Of a stretch of DNA of 64,000 nucleotides, positions 1 to 56,400 are shown piece by piece; position 1 is the stretch's first letter; the number at the start of each line of letters is the position of its first letter. Made by a program: the position numbers and the translations under genes. The stretch lies in IMG/VR virus record IMGVR_UViG_3300028883_000032, positions 62,001 to 126,000 of that record, one strand, 5' to 3'. The notes under the pieces were generated by a model, which was given only the letters and a program-made list of their open reading frames with translations, was not told the DNA's origin and did not search any database.

Positions 1-1
1 C

Positions 2-805
2 GTATTTCCAGCATTTGTACAACCAAAGCTAGATGGAGTTCGTTGCCTTTCTTTTTGCGATAAAAACAACAAAATAAAGTTGTTATCGAGGAAAGTAAAG
101 GACTACACAAGTATTGTTGGACGAAACGAATTCATCATCAATTCTCTTACTAAATTGATGTCACCGGGAGATGTGTTAGATGGTGAATTGTATGTCCATG
201 GGTGGAGTTTGCAACGCATAAACTCTGCCGTAAAAAAGTATCGAGATGATACGCTGTTGCTGCAATATTGGGTATACGACTTTCCCAGTATTGCCGATAC
301 TTTCGAAAGTCGGATAAATCGTTTAAAAGAAGTGTTTGGGAATACACGGCATCCTCAAATAGTATTGACGGAAACTGAACCAATCGATTCTGAACAAACG
401 ATGGTTGAGTACCATAAGCGCTTTGTAAATAGAGGTTTTGAGGGTGCTATAATTCGCAATTCAAGTGGGTTATACTCTTGGGGAAACAGGAGTAATGATC
501 TGCAAAAGTACAAGCATTTTAAAGACGACGAATTCAAAATTGTAGGGAGTTATAGTGAACAACAACAAACAAACGGAAAAGAATATACCTGCATCGTATT
601 CATCTGTGAAACCGATGATGGCACAACTTTTCACTGTCGCCCAAAAGGGACTCTCGAAGATCGCCAGCAAGCTTGGGGAAATCGAGAAAAGTTCATTGGA
701 AAGTATCTCACAGTCCGATACTTCACCCTCACAGATTCAGATCAAGGAAGCGGAAGAGGCGTTCCCCAGTTCCCTGTCGGAATCACCGTCAGAGATTATG
801 AATGA
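2..805 (+). CDS. ATP-dependent DNA ligase (5' end outside window)
   Basis: Frame open from base 2: VQPKLDGVRC (KxDG adenylation motif), LDGELY, YDFP, FEGAIIR, RSNDLQKYK, C-terminal OB fold (GKYLTVRYF...PQFPV). Confidence 0.92.
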   Translation, partial: VFPAFVQPKLDGVRCLSFCDKNNKIKLLSRKVKDYTSIVGRNEFIINSLTKLMSPGDVLDGELYVHGWSLQRINSAVKKYRDDTLLLQYWVYDFPSIADTFESRINRLKEVFGNTRHPQIVLTETEPIDSEQTMVEYHKRFVNRGFEGAIIRNSSGLYSWGNRSNDLQKYKHFKDDEFKIVGSYSEQQQTNGKEYTCIVFICETDDGTTFHCRPKGTLEDRQQAWGNREKFIGKYLTVRYFTLTDSDQGSGRGVPQFPVGITVRDYE

Positions 806-861
806 CAGTGAACCCGAAATTGGACTAATGCATGGAAGGCCTGTAAGTGATGATTTGATCG

Positions 862-1308
862 TTGCAAAGACCGAACGATATGTTAGTAAACATTGAGCCG
901 CATGACGCGGTAAAAGTGCAGGCTTTTCTTACTCTGGATATTTTGGGAATCCCCGTAAGTGACACGGGGATTCTCTATCCAGAAGTTTTAGATAAGTGGC
1001 CAAACCTAAAAGAAGTATGGGAGGGCCTGTTAAAAAGTCACCGACAGATAGATCTAACAGGGAAAGTACTGTTAGTAAATGGTTTAAACAATTCTACAAA
1101 ATTTAAGGTTGCCTTTATATTTACTCATAAAGGCAACAGCCCAAAGAAAGAGTGGTTAGAAAGCGCCCTAACCAAACTTCTTAAAAGGGCAGAAGAACTT
1201 GACATGGACATTCATATGCCTTATATTGAGGAAGCGCTGTGGTTTTTAAAGGGGTATGAATCTCCAATAAGTTTTGTCATGTACAAACCGGAGAACAAGG
1301 ATGAGTAA
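862..1308 (+). CDS. Macro-domain-like protein, degenerate (likely start 880)
   Basis: LESALTKLLKRAEELDMDIHMPYI resembles the macrodomain C-terminal helix/HMPRIG strand; the GCG loop is missing. Confidence 0.45.
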   Translation: MQRPNDMLVNIEPHDAVKVQAFLTLDILGIPVSDTGILYPEVLDKWPNLKEVWEGLLKSHRQIDLTGKVLLVNGLNNSTKFKVAFIFTHKGNSPKKEWLESALTKLLKRAEELDMDIHMPYIEEALWFLKGYESPISFVMYKPENKDE

Positions 1309-1720
1309 TTTCTTACTTATTAAGTACCGTCATGGAATTAATCATGGCGACGAATCAGTGGAACATGGAGTTGTGGGTATTCCCGCGGGAAGTCACATTT
1401 CTGGATCAAAGGCTTTTCAAGAAACAAGCCCACACAATAAGCTGTATGGCGCAATTTATGATGTAAACCAAAGAGCCATTGTCAGCTTGTTTACCAGTTT
1501 AGGAAACCCATATTTTACCGATGAGAGGGGAACTTTTAGACCCGATACTCGTGTACCTGGTGAAAATTGGGGAAGGCGGATTAATGTAATGATTCATAAA
1601 ACCAATAGAATCGTACCCCGCAATCAGTTTATAGAGTGGGGAGGAACCATTACAAAAGGTTCCGCAAATTACATGACGGAAGTTATGTGGAACAGGCTTC
1701 GCGACCACATGACGGCATAA
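1274..1720 (+). CDS. hypothetical protein
   Basis: ORF in the + strand operon, overlapping its neighbour. Confidence 0.6.
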   Translation: MSCTNRRTRMSNFLLIKYRHGINHGDESVEHGVVGIPAGSHISGSKAFQETSPHNKLYGAIYDVNQRAIVSLFTSLGNPYFTDERGTFRPDTRVPGENWGRRINVMIHKTNRIVPRNQFIEWGGTITKGSANYMTEVMWNRLRDHMTA

Positions 1721-1842
1721 TGCAGGCTTTTTATCGTCACCCTAGCTTTAACAAGTCTGCGGGGATTATTGATTTCCGCGGACTTGGTAAGCAGCGGGTA
1801 GGGCCTTACCAAATTTTAAACATGTTGTAAAATGGGAGAAGT

Positions 1843-2001
1843 ATGGTTATAGATGTAGAGAGATTAAAAAGAGAGATGGCGGAGGAAGCGAAACAACTTG
1901 AAAACTTTACTAGCCATTCTCTAGGCTACCCAGCATTTATTTTAAGACAGGCTTTAGAGTACATAACAATACTAGAGACAAAATTACAAAAGGACAGTTA
2001 G
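1843..2001 (+). CDS. small hypothetical protein (52 aa, not in ORF track)
   Basis: GGGAG SD then ATG; MVIDVERLKREMAEEAKQLENFTSHSLGYPAFILRQALEYITILETKLQKDS. Confidence 0.55.
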   Translation: MVIDVERLKREMAEEAKQLENFTSHSLGYPAFILRQALEYITILETKLQKDS

Positions 2002-2077
2002 AGTAACTTGGCCTATTACTGGCCTGTTGATTGGGCCATTCAGGAAGGTTGGCAGAGTGGTTTATTGCATCGGTCTT

Positions 2078-2744
2078 GAAAAACCACTTGATTTTTATAC
2101 CGCTGGTTGTTATATTATATAAACAACCAAGAGTATATTATGCACACTTGTAAACACTGCAAAAAAGAACTGGCTAACCCAAAACATCAGTACTGTTCTA
2201 ACCAATGTCAAGCTAATTATTTACGACAACGTAAAGTCGCCGCTTGGTTACGTGGGGAACATAATGGAATGAGGGGAAAAACTGGTACTGCTAAATGGAT
2301 TAAATGGTATTTGATTAATAAGTTTGGGGAAAAGTGTAGTAATTGTGGTTGGTCTGAAATAAACCCATTTACTGGCAACATACCTATTGAACTTAATCAT
2401 ATTGATGGGGATTTTACCAATAATAACGAAGCCAATTTAGAGCTTTTATGTCCCAACTGCCATTCACTAACTAACAGTTACAAGGGTGCAAACAAGAAAA
2501 AAGGCAGGCCTAGATCAAAGTATTACCGAGGTCTGTAAAATCGAGCAATACTAAAGAAATTTATTATTGCACTAGCCCTCAAATTCAGGGAAACCTCAGC
2601 ATGTAGAGATGGTGGTAATCCTGAGCTAAACCTATATGTAGGAAAGTGCAGAGACTTGACGGGGGCGGCCTAAGTTTAACAAATAAGGCAGAGAGAAAGT
2701 CCAGACCACAAACTAAACAGGCAGTGAAAACTGTAGATGGTAAG
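2078..2744 (+). mobile_element. Group I (IC3-like) self-splicing intron with homing endonuclease ORF
   Basis: Core elements AAATTCAGGGAAACC (2581), AATCCTGAGC (2617), GTGCAGAGACT (2646), GAGAGAAAGTCC (2691); P9 CAGT-GAAA-ACTG; follows a U and ends in G. Confidence 0.92.
2140..2538 (+). CDS. Intron-encoded HNH homing endonuclease with N-terminal zinc finger
   Basis: CKHC..YCSNQC, CSNC..ELNHIDGDFTNNNEANLELLCPNCHS (HNH motif). Confidence 0.9.
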   Translation: MHTCKHCKKELANPKHQYCSNQCQANYLRQRKVAAWLRGEHNGMRGKTGTAKWIKWYLINKFGEKCSNCGWSEINPFTGNIPIELNHIDGDFTNNNEANLELLCPNCHSLTNSYKGANKKKGRPRSKYYRGL

Positions 2745-2830
2745 GAAAACCGACGAGGCCTAAAAACCTCCCAGGGTTCGAATCCCTGACCTTCCTCCAC
2801 AAAACGACAAAATAAGAATCGGAGAGACAG

Positions 2831-3127
2831 ATGAAATTAGTAATTGGAAAAATTATTGACTATTCCGCCAAATTTTCTGATGGCAGCAGCATTAGCGGGC
2901 AGGTTATAGTACCCACTAATGATTCCTATCCAACGTATTACGAGAGAGTACTTGAGATTTTGAGAACCGGTAAATGCGGAGCAAAAATGGATGACATAAA
3001 CACATTACAAGTGGGTTACAGGAAATATACTGAATTTGCTATACACCCAAGTGTGTTTGATACACTGCCTTCTGCTTTACCAAAGACTAGAAAACATAAA
3101 GAATGTTCGGCTGATGGCCATGTTTAG
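2831..3127 (+). CDS. hypothetical protein
   Basis: GGAGAG SD, ORF in operon. Confidence 0.6.
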   Translation: MKLVIGKIIDYSAKFSDGSSISGQVIVPTNDSYPTYYERVLEILRTGKCGAKMDDINTLQVGYRKYTEFAIHPSVFDTLPSALPKTRKHKECSADGHV

Positions 3128-3797
3128 AAAATATGAAAAAACATTTAGATTGCCATCCGTTTTATTCGAGACTGGAAAGCGCGAATTATCTTCGGCTGAT
3201 CAGAAAAAACTACTTAATGGAAAAATTACTGTAGAAGAAAAAATTGATGGGGCTAATGTCGGAATAATAGGAACAAAGCCTGGAGAAGTATTTCGTACGC
3301 AAAAGCGGGGTTCTTTGGTGGGACCATCCGAACATGAGCAATTTAACAGATTTAAAGCTTGGACTGTGGGTCACGCAGATGACTTTAATAGTTTGCCAAA
3401 AGGAATTATAATTTATGGCGAATTTATGTGGGCGACACACCACATATTTTATAATAGCTTACCAGATTGGTTTATATGTTTTGATATCTGGGACAACTGT
3501 GAATATGTCTCACGTTTAGAGAAAGAAGAATGGTGCCAACAGTTAAATCTACAGTGTGTTCCCTTGATTTATGAAGGACCCGTTGCTTCAATAACCGAGT
3601 TGTTAGATTTGTTACCTGGAAAATCCGAATACAGCTCTGACCAAGAAAAAGAGGGCATAGTTGTAAAAAACTATAAAAAACAAATGCGTGCAAAACTTGT
3701 TAGGCCTAATTTCATAAAAGAGGTTAATGAAGATGGCACACATTGGATGACTAAATGGGATCCTAGAAAAGTTAATAAACTGCAAATGGGAGAATAA
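3114..3797 (+). CDS. RNA ligase (Rnl2-like nucleotidyltransferase)
   Basis: EEKIDGAN, YGEF, FDIW, EGIVVK, RAKLV motifs; no OB fold. Confidence 0.85.
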   Translation: MAMFRKYEKTFRLPSVLFETGKRELSSADQKKLLNGKITVEEKIDGANVGIIGTKPGEVFRTQKRGSLVGPSEHEQFNRFKAWTVGHADDFNSLPKGIIIYGEFMWATHHIFYNSLPDWFICFDIWDNCEYVSRLEKEEWCQQLNLQCVPLIYEGPVASITELLDLLPGKSEYSSDQEKEGIVVKNYKKQMRAKLVRPNFIKEVNEDGTHWMTKWDPRKVNKLQMGE

Positions 3798-4204
3798 TGA
3801 AAGTATTTTTGGGCGGTACCTGCGCCGGTAGTAAGTGGCGAGAAGAATTGATTCCTAAGCTAAAGTTGGACTACTTCAATCCAGTTGTTGATGATTGGGA
3901 TGAAATGGCATATATGCAAGAATTGTATGAGCGCGAACATTGTGATTTCGTGCTATACACAATAACTCCAGAAATGCAAGGGGTCTATTCTATCGCGGAA
4001 GTAGTTGACGATTCCAACAAAAGACCACATAAAACAATTCTTTGTATTTTGGGATCAAAGGAAGATTTTGACAATTCACACTTTAACTCATTGTATAAAG
4101 CTCTAACCAAAGTAGGTTTAATGGTTAGAAAAAATGGCGGTAAGTGCTTTGATTCTTTAACAAATGTGGCCCTATACTTAAATAGAATGAATAGGCAGCC
4201 ATAG
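3797..4204 (+). CDS. Nucleoside 2-deoxyribosyltransferase-like protein
   Basis: KVFLGGT..WRE..YFNPVVDDW..E.YEREHCD pattern. Confidence 0.75.
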   Translation: MKVFLGGTCAGSKWREELIPKLKLDYFNPVVDDWDEMAYMQELYEREHCDFVLYTITPEMQGVYSIAEVVDDSNKRPHKTILCILGSKEDFDNSHFNSLYKALTKVGLMVRKNGGKCFDSLTNVALYLNRMNRQP

Positions 4205-4218
4205 GGGTATAAGTAAGA

Positions 4219-4428
4219 ATGGTAAAATACAGGTTATGCCATCTGCAAAAAGGTCATGTGCATACAGTAAGTTACATCCCACAACCTTATGCAGTAGTTG
4301 GTAAAATATTATCTTTAAAGAAAGATCCCGGTTGGGAAGTGATGTCTGCAGGGAACCTTGTTAACCACGATGAAGTAATGGTCCAAAGAGATCTTTATCG
4401 GCATCACAGAGACATAACGGATGTTTAG
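4219..4428 (+). CDS. hypothetical protein
   Basis: 69 aa ORF filling the gap before tRNA-Cys. Confidence 0.6.
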   Translation: MVKYRLCHLQKGHVHTVSYIPQPYAVVGKILSLKKDPGWEVMSAGNLVNHDEVMVQRDLYRHHRDITDV

Positions 4429-4503
4429 GCTGGCGTAGCTAAGTTGGTTAAGGCGTCGGTCTGCAAAACCGTTCAATCGTGGGTTCGAATCCCACCGCTA
4501 GCT
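4429..4503 (+). tRNA. tRNA-Cys(GCA), CCA not encoded
   Basis: GCTGGCG/CGCTAGC acceptor, loop CT-GCA-AA, GTGGG-TTCGAAT-CCCAC T arm, U73 discriminator. Confidence 0.92.
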
Positions 4504-4524
4504 CTTTTAACAGGATAATAAAAA

Positions 4525-4809
4525 ATGGAACTTTTACATTTATCTGATGGTAAAACACTTGTTGTAAAACAAGTATTAAAACATGGTCCTCCTGAAGGAT
4601 TTGAGTATAATTTAGACTACCTAACACGTTCCGGCTACGAAGTTATTAAAATGCCTAATGGAATTGAAGTGATTGGAGAAATGGTAATAGATGCAAAATT
4701 TAAGGAACTTGATAATAGGAGATATTCACGGACGTTACGACTTAATGATGGACGTACTAAAACGTTGCCACTACGACCCTACGAAGGACCGTCTGATATG
4801 TCTTGGTGA
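4525..4809 (+). CDS. hypothetical protein (3' end overlaps phosphatase)
   Basis: AGGA SD; 119 nt overlap with next gene. Confidence 0.5.
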   Translation: MELLHLSDGKTLVVKQVLKHGPPEGFEYNLDYLTRSGYEVIKMPNGIEVIGEMVIDAKFKELDNRRYSRTLRLNDGRTKTLPLRPYEGPSDMSW

Positions 4810-5452
4810 CTTTGTAGATGGCTCCGAGAGAGTGAAAGATTGTTTAGAGTATCTATCGGAACAACCGAACATAGAACCAATATTTGGTAATCATGATAAA
4901 TGGTTCTTGGATTGGGTTCAAACGGGAGAAGACCCTGACCCGTGGTGGTTATATAACGGAGGTCCTGTAACTCTCAAAAGCTATAATTACTATGCAGGTA
5001 ATGCAAGATCAGAACAAGCGAAATATGAGTGCGCAATGCTTAGGTATTGTCCAGACTCCCGAATACCTAGAAAACATGTTGAATTTATTCGAAATGCCCG
5101 TTTATACTATGAAACAGATAATTGGGTTGCTATGCATGGAGGGTTTAGGCCCGAAGTGGGGTTCAAGAAAGAGAATCCTGAAAACATAATGTGGGACCGT
5201 GATCTATTTTATCAGCATTGGCAAAAATTGCCAAAAGATCACAAATTAGTAATCGTAGGCCATACGCCCACGATGGCTGTTACTGGAATTCCAGAACCTA
5301 TATTTAGATATAAGACATTTGGCAAAGACAAAAAGCTTATGTTAATAAATATAGACACTGGTGGAAAAATTGGGAGTGCTTTGTGTGTACTTAATCCAGA
5401 CACACTAGAATGGTGGACTAGTAAAAAAGAGACAAATCCGAAAAACTGGTAA
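4691..5452 (+). CDS. Calcineurin-like metallophosphoesterase (Ser/Thr phosphatase family)
   Basis: GDIHG, GDFVDG, GNHD, HGG, GHTP, DTG motifs. Confidence 0.92.
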   Translation: MQNLRNLIIGDIHGRYDLMMDVLKRCHYDPTKDRLICLGDFVDGSERVKDCLEYLSEQPNIEPIFGNHDKWFLDWVQTGEDPDPWWLYNGGPVTLKSYNYYAGNARSEQAKYECAMLRYCPDSRIPRKHVEFIRNARLYYETDNWVAMHGGFRPEVGFKKENPENIMWDRDLFYQHWQKLPKDHKLVIVGHTPTMAVTGIPEPIFRYKTFGKDKKLMLINIDTGGKIGSALCVLNPDTLEWWTSKKETNPKNW

Positions 5453-5464
5453 CCATAATTAGTA

Positions 5465-6268
5465 ATGGTCAATCGCTATTATACAGACATTAATGCTTAT
5501 GATTTGCTTGATCCCAAGCATGAAAGGATACTAGCAACTCGTGCATTACTTGGTGACGACGCTGCAAGAGATGAACTAATAACATCAAATTTAAGATTTG
5601 TTGTATCTGTAGCTAAACAATATGTTAACCAAGGAATACCGCTGGAAGACCTAATTTCCGAAGGAAATTTGGGGCTTATAACTGCGGTAGAAAAATATGA
5701 CCCGACTAAGAATTATAAGTTTATTACTTATGCTTCTTACTGGATTAGACAAAGTATAATGAAAGCGATAGCGGAGCAGAACCGCACAATTCGTATTCCT
5801 ACGAATAAAGTGGCCCAGCTCTCAAAAGTTCGACAAGCCGAAGATCAGTTAGAGATGCAACTTGAACGTAAGCCAACTTTGGAAGAAGTTCAAGAGCACT
5901 TAGGAGATGATTTCGACGTAGCCTCTGTGGTTGAATACCAAGACAGGCCATTGGGCCTTAATGGATCAACTAATGAAGAACAAGATCTCATCGAAATGAT
6001 ACCAGACCCCAATTCTGAAAATCCGGATGAGTCCCTTCGTGAAACCATGTTTAATGAAGAACTTGGCGAAATAATGAGGGATTGTACAGAAAGAGAAAAA
6101 GATATACTCTATCTGTACTACGGTTTAGGCACGGGTGATAAAATGACATTGGAACAAATTGGATACCTACACGGCATTTGTCGCGAGCGTGTTCGACAGA
6201 TAAAGGCTAAAACAATTGATTTCATAAAGTCACACCCAAATTTAGATACACTAAAGGAGTTTCTATAA
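5465..6268 (+). CDS. RNA polymerase sigma70-family factor lacking region 1.1
   Basis: NLRFVVSVAKQY, DLISEGNLGL, FITYASYWIRQ, RTIRIP, TLEQIG..RERVRQI. Confidence 0.95.
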   Translation: MVNRYYTDINAYDLLDPKHERILATRALLGDDAARDELITSNLRFVVSVAKQYVNQGIPLEDLISEGNLGLITAVEKYDPTKNYKFITYASYWIRQSIMKAIAEQNRTIRIPTNKVAQLSKVRQAEDQLEMQLERKPTLEEVQEHLGDDFDVASVVEYQDRPLGLNGSTNEEQDLIEMIPDPNSENPDESLRETMFNEELGEIMRDCTEREKDILYLYYGLGTGDKMTLEQIGYLHGICRERVRQIKAKTIDFIKSHPNLDTLKEFL

Positions 6269-17167: not shown

Positions 17168-17254
17168 ATGCCTCGTGGAGACGGAACGGGTCCTGACGGA
17201 AAAGGACCACGGACGGGCAGAGGTACGGGAACGTGCCCCCCAGTAAAAAAATAA
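17168..17254 (+). CDS. DUF5320-like micro-protein (28 aa, not in ORF track)
   Basis: AGGAG SD; MPRGDGTGPDGKGPRTGRGTGTCPPVKK matches the MPxGDGTGP..GP.TGRG.G.C pattern. Confidence 0.8.
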   Translation: MPRGDGTGPDGKGPRTGRGTGTCPPVKK

Positions 17255-17263
17255 CGGTATGAC

Positions 17264-17486
17264 AGGTCCACGTGTGTTAAGTCTCAGAAGGCAGAGCTGC
17301 CCTATCCTAGGAATTGGGGTGGAGCCGTGTGCACGGGATCCGGCTTTCGAGCCTTCGCGACCCCTACGAGTAGCGAAGGACAAGGCTCGCATCAAAACGC
17401 AGTGCAAATCCACGGACACTACAGTGGACTTATCGCCCCACGTTGGGGCAACCGCCAAACAAGGTACTTCGGTGCCTTGTTTTTTT
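17264..17486 (+). ncRNA. Structured ncRNA candidate, possibly 6S-like, with terminator
   Basis: GC-rich and ORF-poor; closing stem AGGTCCAC/GTGGACTT, inner stems CGAGCC/GGCTCG and CCTTCGC/GCGAAGG, cUUCGg terminator. Confidence 0.55.
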
Positions 17487-17946
17487 ACAGCAATGTCAAT
17501 AAAATATACAGCATGAAAGCAAATATAAAACCAATACTTACTGCCCCATTAAAGTCCCAATTCAACCAATCTGCAAAACTAAACCCATTTGAATACAGTA
17601 GTTCCTGTTTCCATGCAGGCTGCTTATTACCATATATATACCAAGGTTTCCAACCATCAAATACTTCCCACAGACCTCCTATTACCCAAGATGTCAAACA
17701 TGCTACTATTGGCATTAAAGCAGTTTGCCAATTAAATAAAAACCAGAATGCAGCGACTAAAACTAAAGCAATAAATAAACTGCCGAGTAGGTGCCATTTT
17801 CCATATTTTCCAATATTGGTCTCTTTAATAAAATTCCACTTAAACCCAAACCTGTTAGTACGCACAGCGTCTGGACCTTCGGGAAGACCATCTGTTGGAT
17901 ACCCAAAAAAATCTCTTGTTTTTTTAGTAAAATACAAATCCATCAT
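17485..17946 (-). CDS. Membrane protein
   Basis: Three hydrophobic segments. Confidence 0.65.
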   Translation of the reverse strand: MMDLYFTKKTRDFFGYPTDGLPEGPDAVRTNRFGFKWNFIKETNIGKYGKWHLLGSLFIALVLVAAFWFLFNWQTALMPIVACLTSWVIGGLWEVFDGWKPWYIYGNKQPAWKQELLYSNGFSFADWLNWDFNGAVSIGFIFAFMLYILLTLL

Positions 17947-36521: not shown

Positions 36522-37262
36522 CTAGGCAATGTCAAGTCTTAACTTAACTTCGTTTTTTATTACATCATTTACAGGAAAACCCCTTAGTCGATCTTCAACC
36601 CAATTTTTGAATGGGGTTTGTGCATATTGTCCTTGGGCCCTACCAGCACTATACCAATCCGCAATCGCTTCAAGGTTTGTATTTATATCCGTTGGTGAGG
36701 GGTGGTGGTGAGGATTACGTGATTTGTGCTGCGAAGTAGCTTGCCTAAAATCCGATACAACTTCAGGAGTTTTCTGCCCGAACCAATACCTACGATATGG
36801 TCCCCATTCTGAAGGAGTTAGTTTTGATAAATCATGCTTTAAAAGTTGTAGTCTAGGCACATCCAACTCCCGCCCAGCGCGGTATACATAATATTTGTGT
36901 TTAGTCAGGTACTTCGCATTGTTCCAGTTTTGTGAAAACCAATCCTTTAGGCCAGCCTCTTTTTTAATTCCCCCGGACCCCCTTGTATGGTTGGAGAAGT
37001 TGAAATTTTTGGGTTGCACGCGCAGCGTCGCGGACTTTTCTTCAAAAAATGGAGAAGTGTAAGTATGCTTCGTAATGGTTGGAGCAGTGGAATCCAAGGT
37101 ATCTAGAATACCACGAAAGAAGGGTTCGTTGGACGACGCTGTGCTAGTAGCGGGAACACTATCCGCGGAGCGGATCATGTTGCCTACATGGTCCCTCGAC
37201 TTGGTTGGGTCAAAAGAACCTTGCATAAAATACCCTACATCTTTAACGACTTTCTGAGACAC
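36522..37262 (-). CDS. DUF5662-like HD-domain protein with N-terminal leader
   Basis: TKHKYYV..LLKHDLSK..EWGPY..HKSRNPHH..ADW; domain follows KKEAG. Confidence 0.7.
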   Translation of the reverse strand: MSQKVVKDVGYFMQGSFDPTKSRDHVGNMIRSADSVPATSTASSNEPFFRGILDTLDSTAPTITKHTYTSPFFEEKSATLRVQPKNFNFSNHTRGSGGIKKEAGLKDWFSQNWNNAKYLTKHKYYVYRAGRELDVPRLQLLKHDLSKLTPSEWGPYRRYWFGQKTPEVVSDFRQATSQHKSRNPHHHPSPTDINTNLEAIADWYSAGRAQGQYAQTPFKNWVEDRLRGFPVNDVIKNEVKLRLDIA

Positions 37263-45895: not shown

Positions 45896-46096
45896 CTATG
45901 CCCCTCCCATCATATAGGGGTCCTGGTGCTTCCAGAATAACCCATAGTCACCTTCACACTCATTGAATATGAAGTCTTCATCTTTATCAGCGTCTTTACT
46001 CAATGATTCCTCAGTATACACTCTATTATTTACACTTGGAACACCGGCTTTAATCACAATGCCATGATAACGGTATAAATCTTCTGCCATATTCAT
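45896..46096 (-). CDS. hypothetical protein
   Basis: AGVPSVNNRVYTEESL motif. Confidence 0.55.
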   Translation of the reverse strand: MNMAEDLYRYHGIVIKAGVPSVNNRVYTEESLSKDADKDEDFIFNECEGDYGLFWKHQDPYMMGGA

Positions 46097-46569
46097 TATC
46101 TATCCAATAGGTCCACAGTGTTATTAAATATAGATTCCAATGTATCACCAAACCCAAAACGCTCTTTATTTATTTTTATACTTTTTCGTAAGTTGCCATC
46201 GTTGTGACGCATTGTTGCGGCTTTCCAATCACAAAACATTTCAACGATGTCTATCAAATTCATGTCTTTTATACCATTTTCAAAATGCTCTGGGTGGTGT
46301 CTGTTGTTAGCATAATGATGGTCAAGAGCAGATTGCATATCTTTCAAATAACCTTTATACTCATCACTACCATATGTGCAATCTTTTAATTTCGGAGTAT
46401 ATTCATTAAACGTTGCTAATTCGGGATCTTGTAATTTACTCGAATCGTGCCAAGGCCCACGTTCACTTATTAAGTGAACAATTTCCCTCATAAATTTATT
46501 TACATTACGTATATGTTCCTGTGTTTCAGGCTTGCTATCGTAATCATTTACAGTATCTGCTGTGTTCAA
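46096..46569 (-). CDS. DUF5662-like HD-domain protein
   Basis: TQEHI..WHDSSKL..HHYANNRHHPEHF..EMFCDW. Confidence 0.85.
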   Translation of the reverse strand: MNTADTVNDYDSKPETQEHIRNVNKFMREIVHLISERGPWHDSSKLQDPELATFNEYTPKLKDCTYGSDEYKGYLKDMQSALDHHYANNRHHPEHFENGIKDMNLIDIVEMFCDWKAATMRHNDGNLRKSIKINKERFGFGDTLESIFNNTVDLLDR

Positions 46570-49672: not shown

Positions 49673-50398
49673 ATGACAACCTACGACCGCGACTTGAAAA
49701 AAGCTGTAGCCAGTAGTAAAGAAGCCATCGCCCACATTATGAAGCTCAATGGCCTAAAGACACTCGATGAATTAGCACTACAGTTGGGGATAAGCAAAAG
49801 CTATGCTTACACGCTTTCAAAAGGTATTTTGATGCTGAGCATTCCGCTTATCGACCGAATCGATTCAAGTCTTACTGTGGATGACACCGCGATCAACCTA
49901 TTGTTATCTGTTCAAACTTTTAAGGAGTCATATAATGGGCGACAGAGTGTGAAAAACCAAAAAGGTGGTTCCGGAGTTGTAGCAGATAGTCCGATATCAA
50001 ACATACTTGATGCCTTAAAACGCATCAACAAATGGACCTGGGCAGAACTTGCAAAGAAAGCAAAGGTATCCAGTGTAACCATTGATAGGTGGGTTAAAAT
50101 GGGCCCACCCCCGTCTCTAAAAAAAGAGGCCTTAATACCATTGATAACCTATTGCACTTCCAACCACCATCTTCGAGAATATGGCGAACGCCTCGAACAA
50201 GCTTTTCTTGATTTTAAAGGATTGCCTAAAATTGAAGAAGAAGTGCGGCCTATGGTGGGATTACCAGAAATCACGGTTGGTATTACAAACTGCAAACCCG
50301 TGGAGTCTGTAATCGGTGAGGTGACCATTATGGGGAAGAAATACAAAGTAGTAGAAATTAAAACGTATGAATTGAGAGGAGGGGACGATGGGAACTAA
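49673..50398 (+). CDS. Tandem XRE-like HTH transcription regulator
   Basis: TLDELALQLGISKSYAY and TWAELAKKAKVSSVTIDRW. Confidence 0.8.
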   Translation: MTTYDRDLKKAVASSKEAIAHIMKLNGLKTLDELALQLGISKSYAYTLSKGILMLSIPLIDRIDSSLTVDDTAINLLLSVQTFKESYNGRQSVKNQKGGSGVVADSPISNILDALKRINKWTWAELAKKAKVSSVTIDRWVKMGPPPSLKKEALIPLITYCTSNHHLREYGERLEQAFLDFKGLPKIEEEVRPMVGLPEITVGITNCKPVESVIGEVTIMGKKYKVVEIKTYELRGGDDGN

Positions 50399-50903
50399 CA
50401 TTATATTTCTTGACTTCGATGGAGTCATGGGATACTGTGACGTGGAGGAAATGGAATACACTCCACCATGGTGCAGCAGACGAGTTCGTCCCATATTTAA
50501 TACCGGGGCAGTTGAGGCAATACGTGTGTTATGTGAAAGTCTTAAAGACATACGATTTGTCTTAAGCACCACATGGAGACTGGAGATACGCCCCGGTTAC
50601 GAGCCACATTTTATGCGGTGGTACTGCAACTTCCCACAAGAACTATCTGTACGTTTCGTGGGAAGTACACCCAACTTCCTAGACCAATCCCGAGACGAAG
50701 AAATATCCTCTTGGTTAACACATACAACATTCAATGTATCGTCGTGGGTATGTATCAACCACGCTACGTTGAATACTACCCACCTGTACAAAATACCGGG
50801 GGAAGGCCGGTATTTATGTGTAGACGATACCCCAAAGATACTTGAAATGTTGAAACTTGATCCACAGATCAAGTTTGGAGTTTTTGGGAACATAAAACAA
50901 TAG
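50388..50903 (+). CDS. HAD-family protein (Swiss-Army-knife RNA-repair-like, HAD_SAK_2)
   Basis: IIFLDFDGV, LSTTWR, GSTP..RDEEISSWL; motif IV degenerate. Confidence 0.7.
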   Translation: MGTNIIFLDFDGVMGYCDVEEMEYTPPWCSRRVRPIFNTGAVEAIRVLCESLKDIRFVLSTTWRLEIRPGYEPHFMRWYCNFPQELSVRFVGSTPNFLDQSRDEEISSWLTHTTFNVSSWVCINHATLNTTHLYKIPGEGRYLCVDDTPKILEMLKLDPQIKFGVFGNIKQ

Positions 50904-53999: not shown

Positions 54000-54063
54000 T
54001 ATTTGCTCTCCATTTTGGAATAAGAATATAGCAGCATATCATACAACCCCAGGAGGTAGAGAC

Positions 54064-54588
54064 ATGGTATTGGCATTGCTTATTATTGGCGCCCTGCTCC
54101 TTCTGGGAGCGGGTATTGGTTTCAGTAAAGAGTTTCATAGATACGTGTCAACTATGATACTCCTAGGTGTCATGTTGGCCTCTGTGTATCTGGCCATTCT
54201 TGGTACCATTGCGTATCAAAAAGAGTCCCTGCTATCCATGAATGACAATACCGTGGAGGCCATCAAAGTAATAATAAATACCATACCACAAGACGCATAC
54301 ATTGATAGTTCTTTTGTTATTCATGTAGCTGAAGACTATCCTGATAATATCGCCGAGGCACTTCAAGCCGCGGTTCTTGAGTACAAAACTCGAGAAAAAA
54401 TACTTGATAAAATGGAATCACCAGTACCAATAATATTCCCTTGGATACTACCCTCAAGAAATAGTGCCTCTATAATTATACATAAAGGTGATGCTGATTT
54501 CAATGCTAACTCACCATCTATTCCCCCAACTCCACTAGAAAACGTAACACAAGATACATGTGGCAAGTTAGATCAAAGTTTCCGGTGA
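54064..54588 (+). CDS. Island membrane protein (two N-terminal TM helices)
   Basis: GGAATAAGAA box at 54017, AGGAGG SD. Confidence 0.75.
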   Translation: MVLALLIIGALLLLGAGIGFSKEFHRYVSTMILLGVMLASVYLAILGTIAYQKESLLSMNDNTVEAIKVIINTIPQDAYIDSSFVIHVAEDYPDNIAEALQAAVLEYKTREKILDKMESPVPIIFPWILPSRNSASIIIHKGDADFNANSPSIPPTPLENVTQDTCGKLDQSFR

Positions 54589-55150
54589 CTTCTGCCCCAA
54601 CCCTCTAGGGTTGGGGATAGGCCTCGGAGGTCCTCCCAGAAGCGTGTACCCCGATCCTTGGATTGGTCTCGCCAATTTAAGAGGCGGAAGATCGCCCAGA
54701 CACTGGGAAATGGGGTTAGAATCCCCGCTTGCCTCACCATCGGGAAGTAGCTCAGGTCCGTAAGAGCACCACCCAACGGGGGTGGAGGTCCTTGGTTCAA
54801 ATCCAAGCTTCCCGGCAATACCACCATCGTGGGTGAAAAGCCCACTACAACCAGCAGTATGGCACCGTGTGGAACTTAGTGAAGCAGGGTGTCATTAACA
54901 TACTAGTGTCGATGACGTGCCGATAAGCATGCAATGGTAGACCCCCTACCGTCTGTCATTGTGTGGAATAACGGTGACATCCTAATACCAGTTATAAAGC
55001 CAGCTGGGGCAACACTAGTAACGACTCCCAGACCACAATGGCCTTAATACTGATGCCGGACCAGATTCGGTGGTTGATCATCGAGGTCGCGCTACCACAG
55101 TTTAAGCCTCCCGGACGTGAGTCGACCGGGTGTGGGGTAGGAAAACTCCC
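54589..55150 (+). ncRNA. Large ornate structured RNA candidate with tRNA-like modules
   Basis: GC-rich, no credible ORF, more than 12 helices, crossing long-range pairings, complementary loops TACTAGTGT (54901) and ACACTAGTA (55012). Confidence 0.65.
54741..54815 (+). tRNA. Atypical tRNA-Pro-like element with aberrant anticodon loop CAACGGG
   Basis: CGGGAAG/CTTCCCG acceptor, GCTC/GAGC D stem, CCACC/GGTGG stem, CTTGG-TTCAAAT-CCAAG; lacks U33, D-loop GG and adjacent CCA. Confidence 0.6.
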
Positions 55151-55156
55151 ATGTTT

Positions 55157-55191
55157 CGCCCTCTTCGCACATTGTGCGGAAAGGGCGTTTT
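55157..55191 (+). terminator. Intrinsic terminator ending RNA island
   Basis: CGCCCT..TTCGCAC-ATT-GTGCGGAA..AGGGCG-TTTT. Confidence 0.75.
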
Positions 55192-55501
55192 ATTTAGCCC
55201 TAATTTTCCTTACTTCTTCTCGTACACGGTAGAATGTTAGTAGTTCTTCGTATTGTTCTGCGTCTACCCCGAGGAACTCTATAAGATTTTCTTGTGTTTC
55301 TGCCCACTCCAAGAGTTTTTGGGGAGTAATCTCGTCTCCACTAGGAGTACAGATGGGTATGGTTACAATGTCATCCCTGTCCCTATCTCTATACATCTTT
55401 AGAGCTTGTTCGACTACCCAACTTTTGGTTTGATAGTTGTCAGTAACCGAGTCTAACCAGTCACTTAAGCTATCACTTAATGTTATTGTGTGTCTAGCCA
55501 T
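55190..55501 (-). CDS. Ribbon-helix-helix DNA-binding protein
   Basis: MARHTITLSDSLSDWLDSV..TKSWVVEQAL. Confidence 0.7.
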   Translation of the reverse strand: MARHTITLSDSLSDWLDSVTDNYQTKSWVVEQALKMYRDRDRDDIVTIPICTPSGDEITPQKLLEWAETQENLIEFLGVDAEQYEELLTFYRVREEVRKIRAK

Positions 55502-55628
55502 GACTCGCACAGAAGGAAGTAATCCATTTTTCTATCAAAGCAGACATACTATACCCGTGTTCTTTACATACTGCCCTGAATGTTGCCATGATCTCTTTTG
55601 ATACAGAGAAGTTAACTCGTATTTTCAT
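55494..55628 (-). CDS. Ribbon-helix-helix micro-protein (44 aa, not in ORF track)
   Basis: GAGG SD; MKIRVNFSVSKEIMATFRAVCKEHGYSMSALIEKWITSFCASHG. Confidence 0.75.
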   Translation of the reverse strand: MKIRVNFSVSKEIMATFRAVCKEHGYSMSALIEKWITSFCASHG

Positions 55629-56004
55629 TTTTTCCTCAAAAGTTTTGTTGGGTAGTGCTAACGTGCACACCCATGTTTAAATATACACAATAATATGTCA
55701 TAAGTCAAGTATGAACCCCTGTTTACTTTCCAGGATAACAGATGAATGCTAATAAATTTGAAGTACGTATTTTTCCCCCGAAAAGAAATTGGGGAGGGAA
55801 AACCATATCATTACGGCCATACGGAACTATACCCCCAAATTCGTACTATGGTACAAAGCCATACCAGACTGCGATAATGCAAAGAGGGTTAACCTCAAAA
55901 CGAAGAGCTTGGAAAAAAAGAAAGGCCTCTTCCGGGAAAAATACTACCTTTCCCGTAAACAAGCTTCGAGGCTCTATATCCCGCATCAGTAAAGGGGCTC
56001 AGCG

Positions 56005-56395
<391 letters not shown>

Positions 56396-56400
56396 AACAA

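What the first reader, a model, noticed from the sequence alone, without database searches (positions are those of the whole stretch)
54589..55191. Candidate ~570-nt ornate phage RNA with palindromic kissing loops and embedded tRNA-like modules
Seen: a GC-rich, ORF-free stretch between a membrane gene and a terminator, dense in helices (CTTCTG/CAGAAG enclosing CCCCAACCC/GGGTTGGGG; GTGGG-TGAAAAG-CCCAC; CAGTAT 54855/ATACTG 55047; CACCGT 54863/ACGGTG 54971; GTCATTGTG 54955/CACAATGGC 55034, which crosses the previous pair). Two hairpin loops carry exactly complementary 9-mers (TACTAGTGT 54901, ACACTAGTA 55012), both centred on the palindrome ACTAGT, so they could kiss within or between molecules. 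The 5' part has a T-arm-like GGGG-TTAGAAT-CCCC ending GCCTC-ACCA (54739), followed by an atypical tRNA. Established: GOLLD and ROOL RNAs are large, phage- and tRNA-associated, and can form RNA-only multimers through loop-loop contacts; OLE RNA binds a membrane protein. Inference: a divergent or new ornate RNA class that may multimerise, possibly partnered by the co-transcribed TM protein 54064-54588.
Basis: partly seen in the sequence, partly recalled or inferred. Interest (0 to 1): 0.85.

Follow-up and report, generated by a model that had tools for sequence, protein, structure and literature searches.

The report
Phage tRNA locus with orphan RNA
Behind a small membrane-protein gene, an uncultivated jumbo phage carries one odd tRNA gene, one broken or tRNA-like element and about 340 bases of GC-rich non-coding sequence ending in a terminator. 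This resembles the "tRNA plus mystery small RNAs" cluster of phage T4 more than a demonstrable new giant RNA, and nothing like it was found in any database searched.

Summary
The quoted strings are all present. The stretch is ORF-free, is the most GC-rich ORF-free gap in the window, and ends in a + strand intrinsic terminator.

Two parts are solid:
- A tRNA at 54741-54816 scores 50 bits on the Rfam tRNA model. Its anticodon is ACG and it has A33 instead of U33.
- A tRNA 3' half (T-arm, acceptor strand, ACCA) ends 1 nt upstream of that tRNA, a layout common in phage tRNA arrays.

The upstream element reads either as a 59-nt CCA-ending minihelix or as a tRNA-Arg(UCU) interrupted by 96 nt at position 37/38. 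ARAGORN accepts the second reading at default stringency once the insert is removed (empirical p about 0.02).

The case for an ornate, kissing-loop RNA does not exceed chance:
- A perfect 9-nt inverted repeat occurs in 48% of shuffles.
- The two 9-mers fold just as well into an ordinary nested stem.
- The 3' domain's folding z-score (-2.3 to -2.5) is matched by 12% of random windows from the same genome.

No GOLLD, ROOL, OLE, tmRNA, RNase P or intron model matches, even at E<=10. The phage is a singleton with no homologues, so covariation cannot be tested.

Best reading: a T4-like tRNA-cluster transcript carrying tRNA-derived modules and an orphan 3' RNA.

The parts
54015..54042 (+). Sigma-70-like promoter candidate (TTGGAA-16-TATCAT) upstream of the membrane-protein ORF. 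It is the only + strand candidate ahead of the RNA region.
   Evidence: consensus scan, 9 of 12 matches. Weak evidence, and the phage also encodes its own sigma factor.
54064..54588 (+). ORF of 174 aa with two N-terminal hydrophobic helices, preceded by a GGAGG ribosome-binding site. Its last 27 nt overlap the possible tRNA 5' half, and its TGA stop lies in the possible anticodon stem.
   Evidence: No Pfam or PHROG family. No homologue other than itself.
54562..54594 (+). Possible 5' half of an interrupted tRNA-Arg(UCU): acceptor strand GGCAAGT, a degenerate D arm, anticodon-stem strand GGTGA, and loop CTTCTG.
   Evidence: ARAGORN -ps70 -i. The sequence with the insert removed passes ARAGORN default settings. 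Control p about 0.023. The acceptor pairing is kept in both the MFE and the centroid of 54555-54740, z -3.6.
54595..54690 (+). 96-nt GC-rich branched segment. Helix 54589-54596 / 54683-54690 stacks on the putative anticodon stem. It also holds hairpin 54595-54616 and hairpin 54657-54681. It is either an insert at tRNA position 37/38 or a leader of the minihelix.
   Evidence: helix P 0.47-0.86. There is no bulge-helix-bulge at the junctions (direct reading). No intron or ribozyme model matches.
54681..54739 (+). Alternative reading: a 59-nt tRNA-like minihelix. Acceptor GAGGCGG / TTGCCTC, hairpin CCCAG-ACA-CTGGG, T-arm 54712-54726 with loop TTAGAAT, discriminator A, and an encoded CCA at 54737-54739.
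   Evidence: mascRNA-menRNA model, 17.9 bits, E=1.2, below the gathering score. A tRNA profile hits only the T-arm, 54706-54731. The ACCA + 1 nt + next tRNA layout recurs in unrelated phage tRNA arrays.
54741..54816 (+). tRNA gene with anticodon ACG (Arg). It has a regular acceptor, D and T arms but the anticodon loop is CAACGGG (A33 and G37, with no U in the loop). CCA is not encoded directly after G73.
   Evidence: ARAGORN. Rfam tRNA model 50 bits against gathering 29. A33 is rare: 3 of 300 tRNAs in the comparison set, counting this one.
54817..55156 (+). GC-rich (0.51) ORF-free 3' domain of unknown nature. It starts with ...ACCACCA-T-CG, repeating the CACCATCG junction at 54735. It contains hairpin 54829-54845, the 9-bp pairing 54901-54909 / 55012-55020 that encloses four predicted hairpins, and further hairpins up to 55130.
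   Evidence: No Rfam match. No tRNA-like debris. No homologue found.
55157..55195 (+). Intrinsic terminator for the + strand: 15-nt arms, 87% complementary, followed by TTTTATTT. The complementary strand has no T run after the hairpin.
   Evidence: (pair I1) and direct reading.

Best explanation
This is a small tRNA-cluster-type transcription unit of a jumbo bacteriophage, not one giant RNA.

Transcription starts upstream of the membrane-protein gene, runs through 54589-55156 and stops at the intrinsic terminator at 55157-55195 (inferred).

The non-coding part is modular:
1. A tRNA-derived element ending in ...ACCA at 54739.
2. One nucleotide later, a complete but atypical tRNA-Arg(ACG) with A33.
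3. A GC-rich tail of about 340-375 nt.

Host RNase P would cut at the 5' end of the tRNA (54741). That cut also leaves module 1 with a CCA-type 3' end. 3' processing of the tRNA would then release the tail as a separate RNA protected by the terminator hairpin (inferred from standard tRNA processing).

The layout mirrors phage T4, where tRNA-Arg is followed on the same strand by the stable RNAs RNAD and RNAC, whose roles are unknown.

The likely role of the tRNA module or modules is to supply arginine decoding (CGU-family and possibly AGA codons) in a form that host anticodon nucleases may not recognise. This fits the phage's own RNA-repair genes.

The function of the 3' tail is unknown. I think it is more likely than not a stable structured RNA.
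For: Shown by tool results:
- The tRNA is called by ARAGORN and scores 50 bits on the Rfam tRNA model.
- The T-arm, acceptor strand and ACCA lie 1 nt before it.
- The layout 'T-loop TTAGAAT ... ACCA, 1-nt spacer, next tRNA' recurs in many unrelated phage tRNA arrays from metagenomes.
- The + strand has a terminator.
- The region has no credible ORF.
- It has the highest GC of all ORF-free gaps in a 40% GC genome.
- The junction string CACCATCG occurs after module 1 and again after the tRNA.
- In T4, tRNA-Arg is followed by rnaD (119 nt, ending ...CACCA) and rnaC (139 nt, with a tRNA-type T-arm). Their roles are unknown (PMC3014915).
- AGA (14.6 per 1000 codons) and CGT (13.9 per 1000) are the two commonest Arg codons in this phage. 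They match the two anticodons read in the locus.
- Non-U33 tRNAs make up 6% of tRNAs in unrelated phage arrays.
- Phage tRNAs with anticodon-loop changes that escape host nucleases are described in PMC10264068.
- The phage encodes an RNA ligase, a metallophosphoesterase and a HAD_SAK_2 RNA-repair domain.
Against: - No transcript data exist, so co-transcription and processing are inferred.
- No homologue exists, so no conservation or covariation supports a function for module 1 or the 3' tail.
- The tail's folding energy is unremarkable for this genome.
- A33 may make the tRNA a poor decoder.
- Module 1 fits neither reading cleanly. The minihelix has 1-2 extra nucleotides between the T stem and the acceptor. 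The interrupted tRNA has a 3-nt D loop, G37, a 4-bp T stem and a TCACCA tail that is out of register.
- Similarity to T4 RNAC/RNAD is positional only. blastn finds only the 16-nt T-arm.
Confidence: 0.5

Rival explanations
1. Decay products. The locus holds one working tRNA, and the remainder is wreckage of a former tRNA array: a tRNA 3' half, a rearranged 5' half and duplicated fragments. It is transcribed but has no function of its own.
For: - Short internal direct repeats resemble tRNA pieces: GGAGGTCCT at 54626 and 54784, AAGCTTCCCGG at 54805 and AAGCCTCCCGG at 55104, and a 16-mer at 54625 and 54685.
- Module 1 is imperfect under both readings.
- The 3' domain's z-score is ordinary.
- The whole neighbourhood is made of orphan genes, which suggests a fast-evolving accessory region.
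Against: - A tRNA sequence profile finds no tRNA-like debris in the 3' domain.
- Junk in a 40% GC phage should drift towards AT. Other gaps have GC 0.28-0.40, but this is the most GC-rich gap at 0.517.
- The unit keeps a clean terminator.
Confidence: 0.28
2. One reading: one ~570-nt ornate RNA of a new class. It has embedded tRNA-like modules and two palindromic (ACTAGT) loops that kiss within or between molecules to build multimers, as in ROOL and GOLLD. It may work with the upstream membrane protein.
For: - ROOL and GOLLD are phage or prophage RNAs often found near tRNA islands. They form cages using kissing loops, some of them palindromic (PMC12286853).
- The size, GC content and ORF-free nature fit.
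- With the 9-mers forced single-stranded the fold loses only 7.5 kcal/mol, while a 9-bp loop-loop duplex is worth about -10.4 kcal/mol. The kissing model is therefore energetically possible.
Against: - No match to the ROOL, GOLLD or OLE models at E<=10.
- The 9-mer complementarity is expected in 48% of shuffles.
- The nested stem is the favoured fold, and in the constrained fold only one of the two 9-mers sits in a hairpin loop.
- An authentic tRNA in the middle should be excised by RNase P and 3' processing.
- The membrane protein is an orphan.
- No homologues were found with loop-based patterns.
Confidence: 0.12
3. Module 1 is a live, interrupted tRNA-Arg(UCU). The 96-nt segment 54595-54690 is an intervening sequence at the canonical 37/38 position. 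It is removed by an endonuclease, and the halves are rejoined by the phage's own RNA ligase and end-healing enzymes.
For: - With the 96 nt removed, the 78-nt product passes ARAGORN at default stringency. It has a 7-bp acceptor stem, a 5-bp anticodon stem and the loop CUUCUGA with U33.
- Only 7 of 300 trials with random left ends gave a pass with this 3' half.
- AGA is the commonest Arg codon in the phage.
- A helix brings the two junctions together.
- An RNA ligase, a phosphoesterase and a HAD_SAK_2 protein are encoded in the same genome.
Against: - The intron position was imposed by the search.
- The D arm is nearly absent, position 37 is G rather than the A expected for an ANN-codon reader, the variable arm is long, the T stem has 4 bp, and the 3' end is out of register with the encoded CCA.
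- The junctions show neither a bulge-helix-bulge nor a group I core, and 96 nt is too short for a group I intron.
- The 5' half lies inside the membrane-protein ORF.
- p of about 0.02 is not strong after the many features inspected.
Confidence: 0.06
4. The tRNA 3' half (54691-54739) is the core of an attachment site (attP) used for integration into a host tRNA gene.
For: A free-standing tRNA 3' half that starts in the anticodon loop and runs to CCA is what many attP cores look like. This rests on established knowledge of tRNA-gene integration sites.
Against: - No integrase domain appears in the flanking proteins.
- The fragment sits 1 nt from a full tRNA, as in tRNA arrays.
- The T-loop TTAGAAT is typical of phage tRNAs.
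- Jumbo lytic-type gene content.
Confidence: 0.03

Closest known systems
Phage T4 tRNA subcluster: tRNA-Arg followed by stable RNAs RNAD (species 2) and RNAC (species 1)
   Same: - A tRNA-Arg gene is followed on the same strand, after 1-6 nt spacers, by a few hundred nt of non-coding stable RNA.
- Those RNAs carry tRNA-type ends: rnaD ends ...CACCA, and rnaC has a canonical T-arm and gives a weak tRNA-Sec-model hit.
- Their function is unknown (PMC3014915).
   Different: - No sequence similarity beyond a 16-nt T-arm.
- Here a tRNA-like element precedes the tRNA.
- The tail is longer (about 340-375 nt against 119 + 139 nt) and shows no T-arm or acceptor features.
- No transcript evidence here.
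ROOL and GOLLD (large ornate phage/prophage RNAs near tRNA islands)
   Same: - Phage-encoded, ORF-free, GC-rich relative to the genome, several hundred nt long and next to tRNA genes.
- Palindromic loop sequences could in principle mediate symmetric contacts (PMC12286853).
   Different: - No covariance-model match at any threshold tried.
- No homologues, so no conserved pseudoknots or covarying bridges can be shown.
- An excisable tRNA sits inside the proposed molecule.
tRNA-like processing modules such as mascRNA at the MALAT1 3' end
   Same: An acceptor/T-arm minihelix without an anticodon arm, able to direct RNase P cleavage of a longer transcript. This was the only non-tRNA model to align to 54681-54735.
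   Different: - The score of 17.9 bits is far below the 42.5-bit gathering score, so this is an analogy and not membership.
- mascRNA is a vertebrate RNA.
- Here CCA is encoded.
Phage tRNAs with anticodon-loop substitutions that evade host anticodon nucleases
   Same: - A phage-encoded tRNA has an unusual anticodon loop (A33, G37).
- The genome also carries RNA-repair genes.
- Non-U33 tRNAs recur in other phage arrays (concept from PMC10264068).
   Different: - A33 removes the U-turn nucleotide itself.
- Neither decoding nor nuclease resistance was tested.
- The host and its defences are unknown.
tRNA introns (bacterial group I introns in anticodon loops; archaeal/eukaryal bulge-helix-bulge introns at 37/38)
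   Same: A possible intervening sequence lies exactly at 37/38 of a possible tRNA-Arg(UCU).
   Different: - 96 nt with no group I core and no model hit.
- The junctions lie in a continuous helix with a single bulged A, not a bulge-helix-bulge.
- The host is bacterial (sigma-70-type factor).

Membership tests
tRNA (Rfam RF00005) | Cloverleaf scoring above the curated threshold | tested here: met
   54741-54815 scores 50 bits against gathering 29. ARAGORN calls tRNA-Arg(ACG).
tRNA (Rfam RF00005) | Canonical 7-nt anticodon loop with U33 and a purine at 37 | tested here: not met
   The loop is CAACGGG, so position 33 is A. Only 3 of 300 tRNAs in the comparison set have A33, counting this one.
tRNA (second gene, module 1) | A contiguous cloverleaf, or a cloverleaf after removal of a recognised intron type | tested here: inconclusive
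   - No tRNA-model hit on the contiguous sequence.
- It passes ARAGORN default after in-silico removal of 54595-54690, with control p about 0.023.
- The insert is neither a group I nor a bulge-helix-bulge intron.
GOLLD RNA | Match to the family covariance model (conserved 3' half with pseudoknots) | tested here: not met
   No match at the gathering score or at E<=10 on 54400-55400, both strands. That the family is in Rfam is from my own knowledge.
ROOL RNA | Match to the family covariance model | tested here: not met
   No match. That the family is in Rfam is from my own knowledge.
ROOL / GOLLD | Covarying intermolecular kissing loops and homo-oligomer formation | not testable with these tools
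   No homologues exist for covariation. Oligomerisation needs experiments.
OLE RNA | Match to the family model, plus an adjacent OapA-type membrane protein partner | tested here: not met
   No model match. The adjacent membrane ORF has no Pfam or PHROG family and no homologues.
tmRNA (standard or permuted) | A tRNA-like domain with G3:U70, a tag reading frame, and a model or ARAGORN hit | tested here: not met
   - No tmRNA from ARAGORN, even at -ps80.
- No Rfam hit.
- Position 3:70 is C-G or G-C in the two possible acceptor stems (direct reading).
- Positive control: the same tool finds a phage tmRNA in L003.
RNase P RNA | Match to the family models (P4 helix and conserved regions) | tested here: not met
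   No match at E<=10.
Group I intron | A P3-P9 catalytic core and a model match | tested here: not met
   No match at E<=10. The insert is only 96 nt. Positive control: group I introns are found in L040 by the same tool.
Archaeal-type tRNA intron | A bulge-helix-bulge motif at both splice junctions, in a host with a splicing endonuclease | tested here: not met
   The junctions lie in the continuous helix 54584-54596 / 54683-54696 with one bulged A (direct reading). The phage carries a bacterial-type sigma-70 factor.
T4-type tRNA-cluster stable RNAs (RNAC/RNAD) | Non-coding RNA lying immediately 3' of a tRNA on the same strand within a tRNA transcription unit | tested here: met
   The tail starts right after the tRNA and ends at a terminator. 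The T4 layout is shown.
T4-type tRNA-cluster stable RNAs (RNAC/RNAD) | Sequence homology to T4 rnaC or rnaD | tested here: not met
   blastn finds only a 16-nt T-arm match, E=0.07.
T4-type tRNA-cluster stable RNAs (RNAC/RNAD) | Accumulation as discrete, stable processed RNAs | not testable with these tools
   No expression data exist for this uncultivated phage.

The most novel reading that the evidence does not exclude
Module 1 is a functional tRNA-Arg(UCU) whose anticodon loop is interrupted at 37/38 by a 96-nt structured segment that is neither a group I nor a bulge-helix-bulge intron. It would be matured by cleavage and then rejoined by the phage's own RNA ligase and end-healing enzymes. 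That would be protein-dependent tRNA splicing in a bacteriophage.
Probability: 0.06. Interest if true: 0.85.

Novelty: new member of a known kind. Interest (0 to 1): 0.3.

Why it matters
If the modular reading holds, this adds a second, unrelated example of something left unexplained in T4 for fifty years: stable tRNA-like or structured RNAs riding on phage tRNA transcripts. It occurs in a jumbo phage that also carries RNA-repair genes and an anticodon-loop-variant tRNA. That would link such RNAs to the conflict over tRNA cleavage between phages and their hosts.

If the interrupted-tRNA reading or the ornate-RNA reading were true, the interest would be much higher. At present the locus is an orphan with no comparative support, so it is a candidate for a cheap bench test, not a discovery.

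Tried and rejected
**Family scans**
- Rfam on the whole window at gathering score, and on 54400-55400 at E<=10. Only the tRNA, a sub-threshold mascRNA-like hit and noise were found.
- ARAGORN in tmRNA, intron and mitochondrial modes and at lowered thresholds. No tmRNA was found, and several plainly spurious intron-containing calls appeared.

**Homologue searches, all returning only the source contig or chance hits**
- blastn of the locus against GenBank phages and against plasmids, and of the tRNA alone against phages.
- The membrane protein, the 322-aa neighbour and the HAD protein against 5.8 billion proteins.
- The membrane protein and TerL against IMG/VR.
- DNA patterns in IMG/VR: the T-arm 28-mer and 15-mer, the D-arm 21-mer, the T-loop plus two ACTAGT, a loop-only pattern, and the A33 anticodon arm.
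- DNA patterns in JGI metagenomes: the two T-loops.
- DNA patterns in GTDB genomes.
- Self-blast within the window found no second copy.

**Readings rejected**
- tmRNA, including the permuted form. There is no G3:U70 and no model hit.
- RNase P RNA, SRP RNA and small ribozymes. No hits.
- Archaeal virus or bulge-helix-bulge intron. The phage has a bacterial sigma factor and the junctions show no bulge-helix-bulge.
- tRNA debris in the 3' domain. The tRNA profile finds none.
- Protein coding. Only a 64-aa ORF that runs through the terminator, and a 90-aa antisense ORF across the tRNA.

**Methods that failed or could not be run**
- My first control for the interrupted tRNA was confounded by neighbouring real tRNAs, so I redid it with non-tRNA sequence.
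- A positive control for ROOL or GOLLD detection could not be obtained. None occurred in 132 kb of phage tRNA arrays, and the paper listing GOLLD genomes is not held.
Full report
**Context**

The window is part of a 206,856-bp viral contig, IMGVR_UViG_3300028883_000032, which is the same as metagenome contig Ga0272443_10000067. It is a tailed phage:
- It has a large terminase, a tail sheath and a family A DNA polymerase.
- It has a sigma-70-type factor, an RNA ligase, a metallophosphoesterase, a DNA ligase and PhoH.
- It has a HAD_SAK_2 'RNA repair' domain protein 3.7 kb upstream of the finding.

The sigma factor and the GGAGG ribosome-binding sites point to a bacterial host. The closest GenBank terminase is only 28% identical. 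The terminase and three proteins around the finding have no relatives other than themselves, either in IMG/VR or in a 5.8-billion-protein collection. The phage is a singleton, and this limits everything that follows.

**Observation check**

- GC is 0.52-0.59 in the region against about 0.37-0.43 in the flanks.
- The ORF-free gap 54846-55189 is the most GC-rich of 23 ORF-free gaps in a 40% GC window.
- Only a 64-aa ORF that reads through the terminator and a 90-aa antisense ORF across the tRNA are found.
- A 15-nt-arm hairpin at 55157-55187 is followed by TTTTATTT on the + strand only.
- The + strand folds better than the - strand, z -4.35 against -2.57, from 20 shuffles each.

A + strand non-coding RNA locus is therefore a fair description.

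**Whether the structure evidence exceeds chance**

- A perfect inverted repeat of at least 9 nt occurs in 48% of 500 dinucleotide shuffles of the region. The 'exactly complementary 9-mers' carry little weight by themselves.
- In the Boltzmann ensemble of 54817-55150 the two 9-mers pair with each other as an ordinary nested 9-bp stem (P 0.88-1.0). That stem closes a multiloop with four hairpins.
- Forcing both 9-mers to stay single-stranded costs 7.5 kcal/mol, while a 9-bp duplex is worth about -10.4 kcal/mol. Energy cannot separate a nested stem from a kissing complex.
- The 3' domain's z-score is -2.3 and -2.5. That is unremarkable: 60 random 334-nt windows of the same genome average -0.80 (sd 1.17), and 11.7% reach -2.3 or lower.
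- The 5' part (54555-54740) is more unusual, with z -3.6 to -4.3.
- The ensemble gives P=0 to the true tRNA cloverleaf, so these calculations cannot decide any helix.

**The tRNA**

54741-54816 is a tRNA by ARAGORN and by the Rfam model, at 50 bits against a gathering score of 29. Its arms are regular, but the anticodon loop is CAACGGG. That gives anticodon ACG (Arg), A33 instead of the near-universal U33, and G37. Among 300 tRNAs in the unrelated phage arrays I had fetched plus this window, 282 have U33, 15 have C33 and 3 have A33, counting this one. It has no close relative among GenBank phage tRNAs.

**Module 1, upstream of the tRNA**

The T-arm at 54712-54726 (loop TTAGAAT) is followed by GCTTGCCTC-ACCA. 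One nucleotide later the tRNA begins. The pattern 'TTAGAAT T-loop ... ACCA, one spacer base, next tRNA' turned up repeatedly in unrelated phage tRNA arrays from metagenomes. This is therefore the 3' end of a phage-type tRNA gene. A tRNA sequence profile recognises only this T-arm and the full tRNA in the whole region.

Two 5' partners are possible.

(i) GAGGCGG at 54681 gives a 59-nt CCA-ending minihelix with a small hairpin in place of the D and anticodon arms.
- The only model that aligns to it is mascRNA-menRNA, at 17.9 bits, far below threshold.
- It leaves 1-2 extra bases between the T stem and the acceptor.

(ii) GGCAAGT at 54562 gives a tRNA-Arg(UCU) with anticodon stem GGTGA/TCGCC and loop CUUCUGA, interrupted after position 37 by 96 nt (54595-54690).
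- With those 96 nt removed in silico, the 78-nt product passes ARAGORN at default stringency.
- As a control I joined tRNA 3' halves to 295 random non-tRNA left ends. This gave a default hit for 44 of 298 real 3' halves, but for only 7 of 300 trials with this particular 3' half. The empirical p is about 0.02.
- The acceptor pairing of (ii) is kept in both the MFE and the centroid of 54555-54740.
- A helix (54589-54596 with 54683-54690, P 0.47-0.86) stacks on the putative anticodon stem and brings the two junctions together.
- AGA and CGT are the two commonest Arg codons of the phage (14.6 and 13.9 per 1000). Those are the codons served by UCU and ACG anticodons.

Points against (ii):
- The search imposed the 37/38 position.
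- The D loop has only 3 nt, position 37 is G, the variable arm is long and the T stem has 4 bp.
- The 3' end reads TCACCA, out of register with a discriminator-CCA.
- The 5' half lies in the last 27 nt of the membrane-protein ORF.
- The insert has no group I core, no ribozyme hit and no bulge-helix-bulge.

I leave module 1 as 'tRNA-derived, reading undecided'.

**The 3' domain (54817-55156)**

- It begins ...ACCACCA-T-CG, repeating the CACCATCG junction seen at 54735.
- It has no Rfam match on either strand at E<=10, no tRNA-like debris, no credible ORF and no second copy in the window.

**Search for relatives**

- Sequence searches against GenBank phages and plasmids found nothing.
- Exact and gapped patterns were built from the T-arm, the D-arm, the two T-loops, the T-loop plus both ACTAGT, a hairpin plus both ACTAGT, the A33 anticodon arm, and a 'loops specified, stems free' pattern. 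They returned only the source contig or chance hits lacking the stems.
- Covariation, the one test that could establish or refute a structured RNA, is therefore impossible with present data.

**Comparison with known systems**

- The locus is not a member of GOLLD, ROOL, OLE, tmRNA, RNase P RNA or the group I introns by covariance model. The same tool does find a phage tmRNA and group I introns in other loci.
They establish possibility, not membership.
- The closest known arrangement is the T4 tRNA subcluster. There tRNA-Arg is followed, after 1 and 6 nt, by rnaD (119 nt, ending ...CACCA) and rnaC (139 nt, with a canonical T-arm and a weak tRNA-Sec-model hit). Their roles remain unknown (PMC3014915).
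- The similarity to T4 is positional and architectural. blastn finds only a 16-nt T-arm match.

**Mechanism I consider most likely (confidence about 0.5)**

1. A transcript starts upstream of the membrane-protein gene and ends at the terminator.
2. RNase P cuts at 54741, freeing the tRNA and leaving module 1 with a CCA-type 3' end.
3. 3' processing of the tRNA releases a tail of about 340-375 nt, stabilised by the terminator hairpin.

The tRNA module or modules would supply Arg decoding in a form that may escape host anticodon nucleases (concept from PMC10264068). This fits the phage's RNA ligase, phosphoesterase and HAD_SAK_2 genes. The sequence features are shown. Co-transcription, processing, stability and function are all inferred.

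**Rivals**

| Rival | Confidence |
|---|---|
| Decayed tRNA-array wreckage around one live tRNA | 0.28 |
| A spliced interrupted tRNA-Arg(UCU) | 0.06 |
| An attP core | 0.03 |

**Verdict**

This is a real non-coding locus with one atypical tRNA and one tRNA-derived element, followed by an orphan GC-rich tail. The specific evidence offered for an ornate, kissing-loop, multimeric RNA is at chance level, and membership of the named families was tested and not met. Interest is moderate to low (0.3) until a transcript map or homologues exist. The bench tests are cheap and would discriminate all the readings.

Noticed in passing
window 17168-17490 (+): A 28-aa mini-ORF matches only the first 26 positions of the 99-residue DUF5320 profile (E=5e-8). 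It is followed by about 230 nt of GC-rich (0.55), ORF-free sequence ending in a hairpin plus T-run terminator. The folding z-score is about -3.0 and there is no Rfam match. It could be a truncated or frameshifted DUF5320 gene, or a second orphan structured RNA.
   Followed up: partly
window 3036-6268 (+): An RNA ligase (PF09414), tRNA-Cys(GCA) at 4429-4504, a metallophosphoesterase and a sigma-70-type factor lie in a row. This looks like a tRNA-repair kit placed around a tRNA gene.
   Followed up: partly
window 50388-50903 (+): A protein with a HAD_SAK_2 domain ('Swiss Army Knife' RNA repair proteins) lies 3.7 kb upstream of the finding. It has no close homologue in 5.8 billion proteins.
   Followed up: partly
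window 55190-55670 (-): Two overlapping small ORFs converge on the RNA locus. The 58-aa one has weak ribbon-helix-helix (ParG/CopG-like) hits at E about 0.01, and the 106-aa one has no family. This may be a toxin-antitoxin-like pair.
   Followed up: no
window 36522-37262 (-) and 46096-46569 (-): Two DUF5662 paralogues lie 9 kb apart in the same phage.
   Followed up: no
window 56100-56400: A very AT-rich stretch (GC 0.19-0.25) lies 1 kb downstream of the finding. It could be a promoter cluster or an origin-like region.
   Followed up: no
L033 (Ga0181520_10069505) 1-3183: In an unrelated metagenomic tRNA array, seven tRNAs carry C33 instead of U33. Across all fetched arrays, 6% of tRNAs lack U33. 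tRNAs with the T-loop TTAGAAT (A56) mostly also lack the D-loop GG, which suggests a phage tRNA subclass with a remodelled elbow.
   Followed up: partly
L077 (phage T4, NC_000866) 2409-2547 (-): T4 rnaC (species 1 RNA) gives a weak full-length alignment to the tRNA-Sec model (17.5 bits, E=0.92) and has a canonical T-arm. This is consistent with it being an expanded tRNA-like RNA.
   Followed up: no
L003 (IMGVR_UViG_3300035510_000060) 2583-2926 (+): A phage-encoded tmRNA (68 bits) lies directly after a tRNA in a 34.8-kb viral contig. It was hit by chance through the T-loop 15-mer.
   Followed up: no
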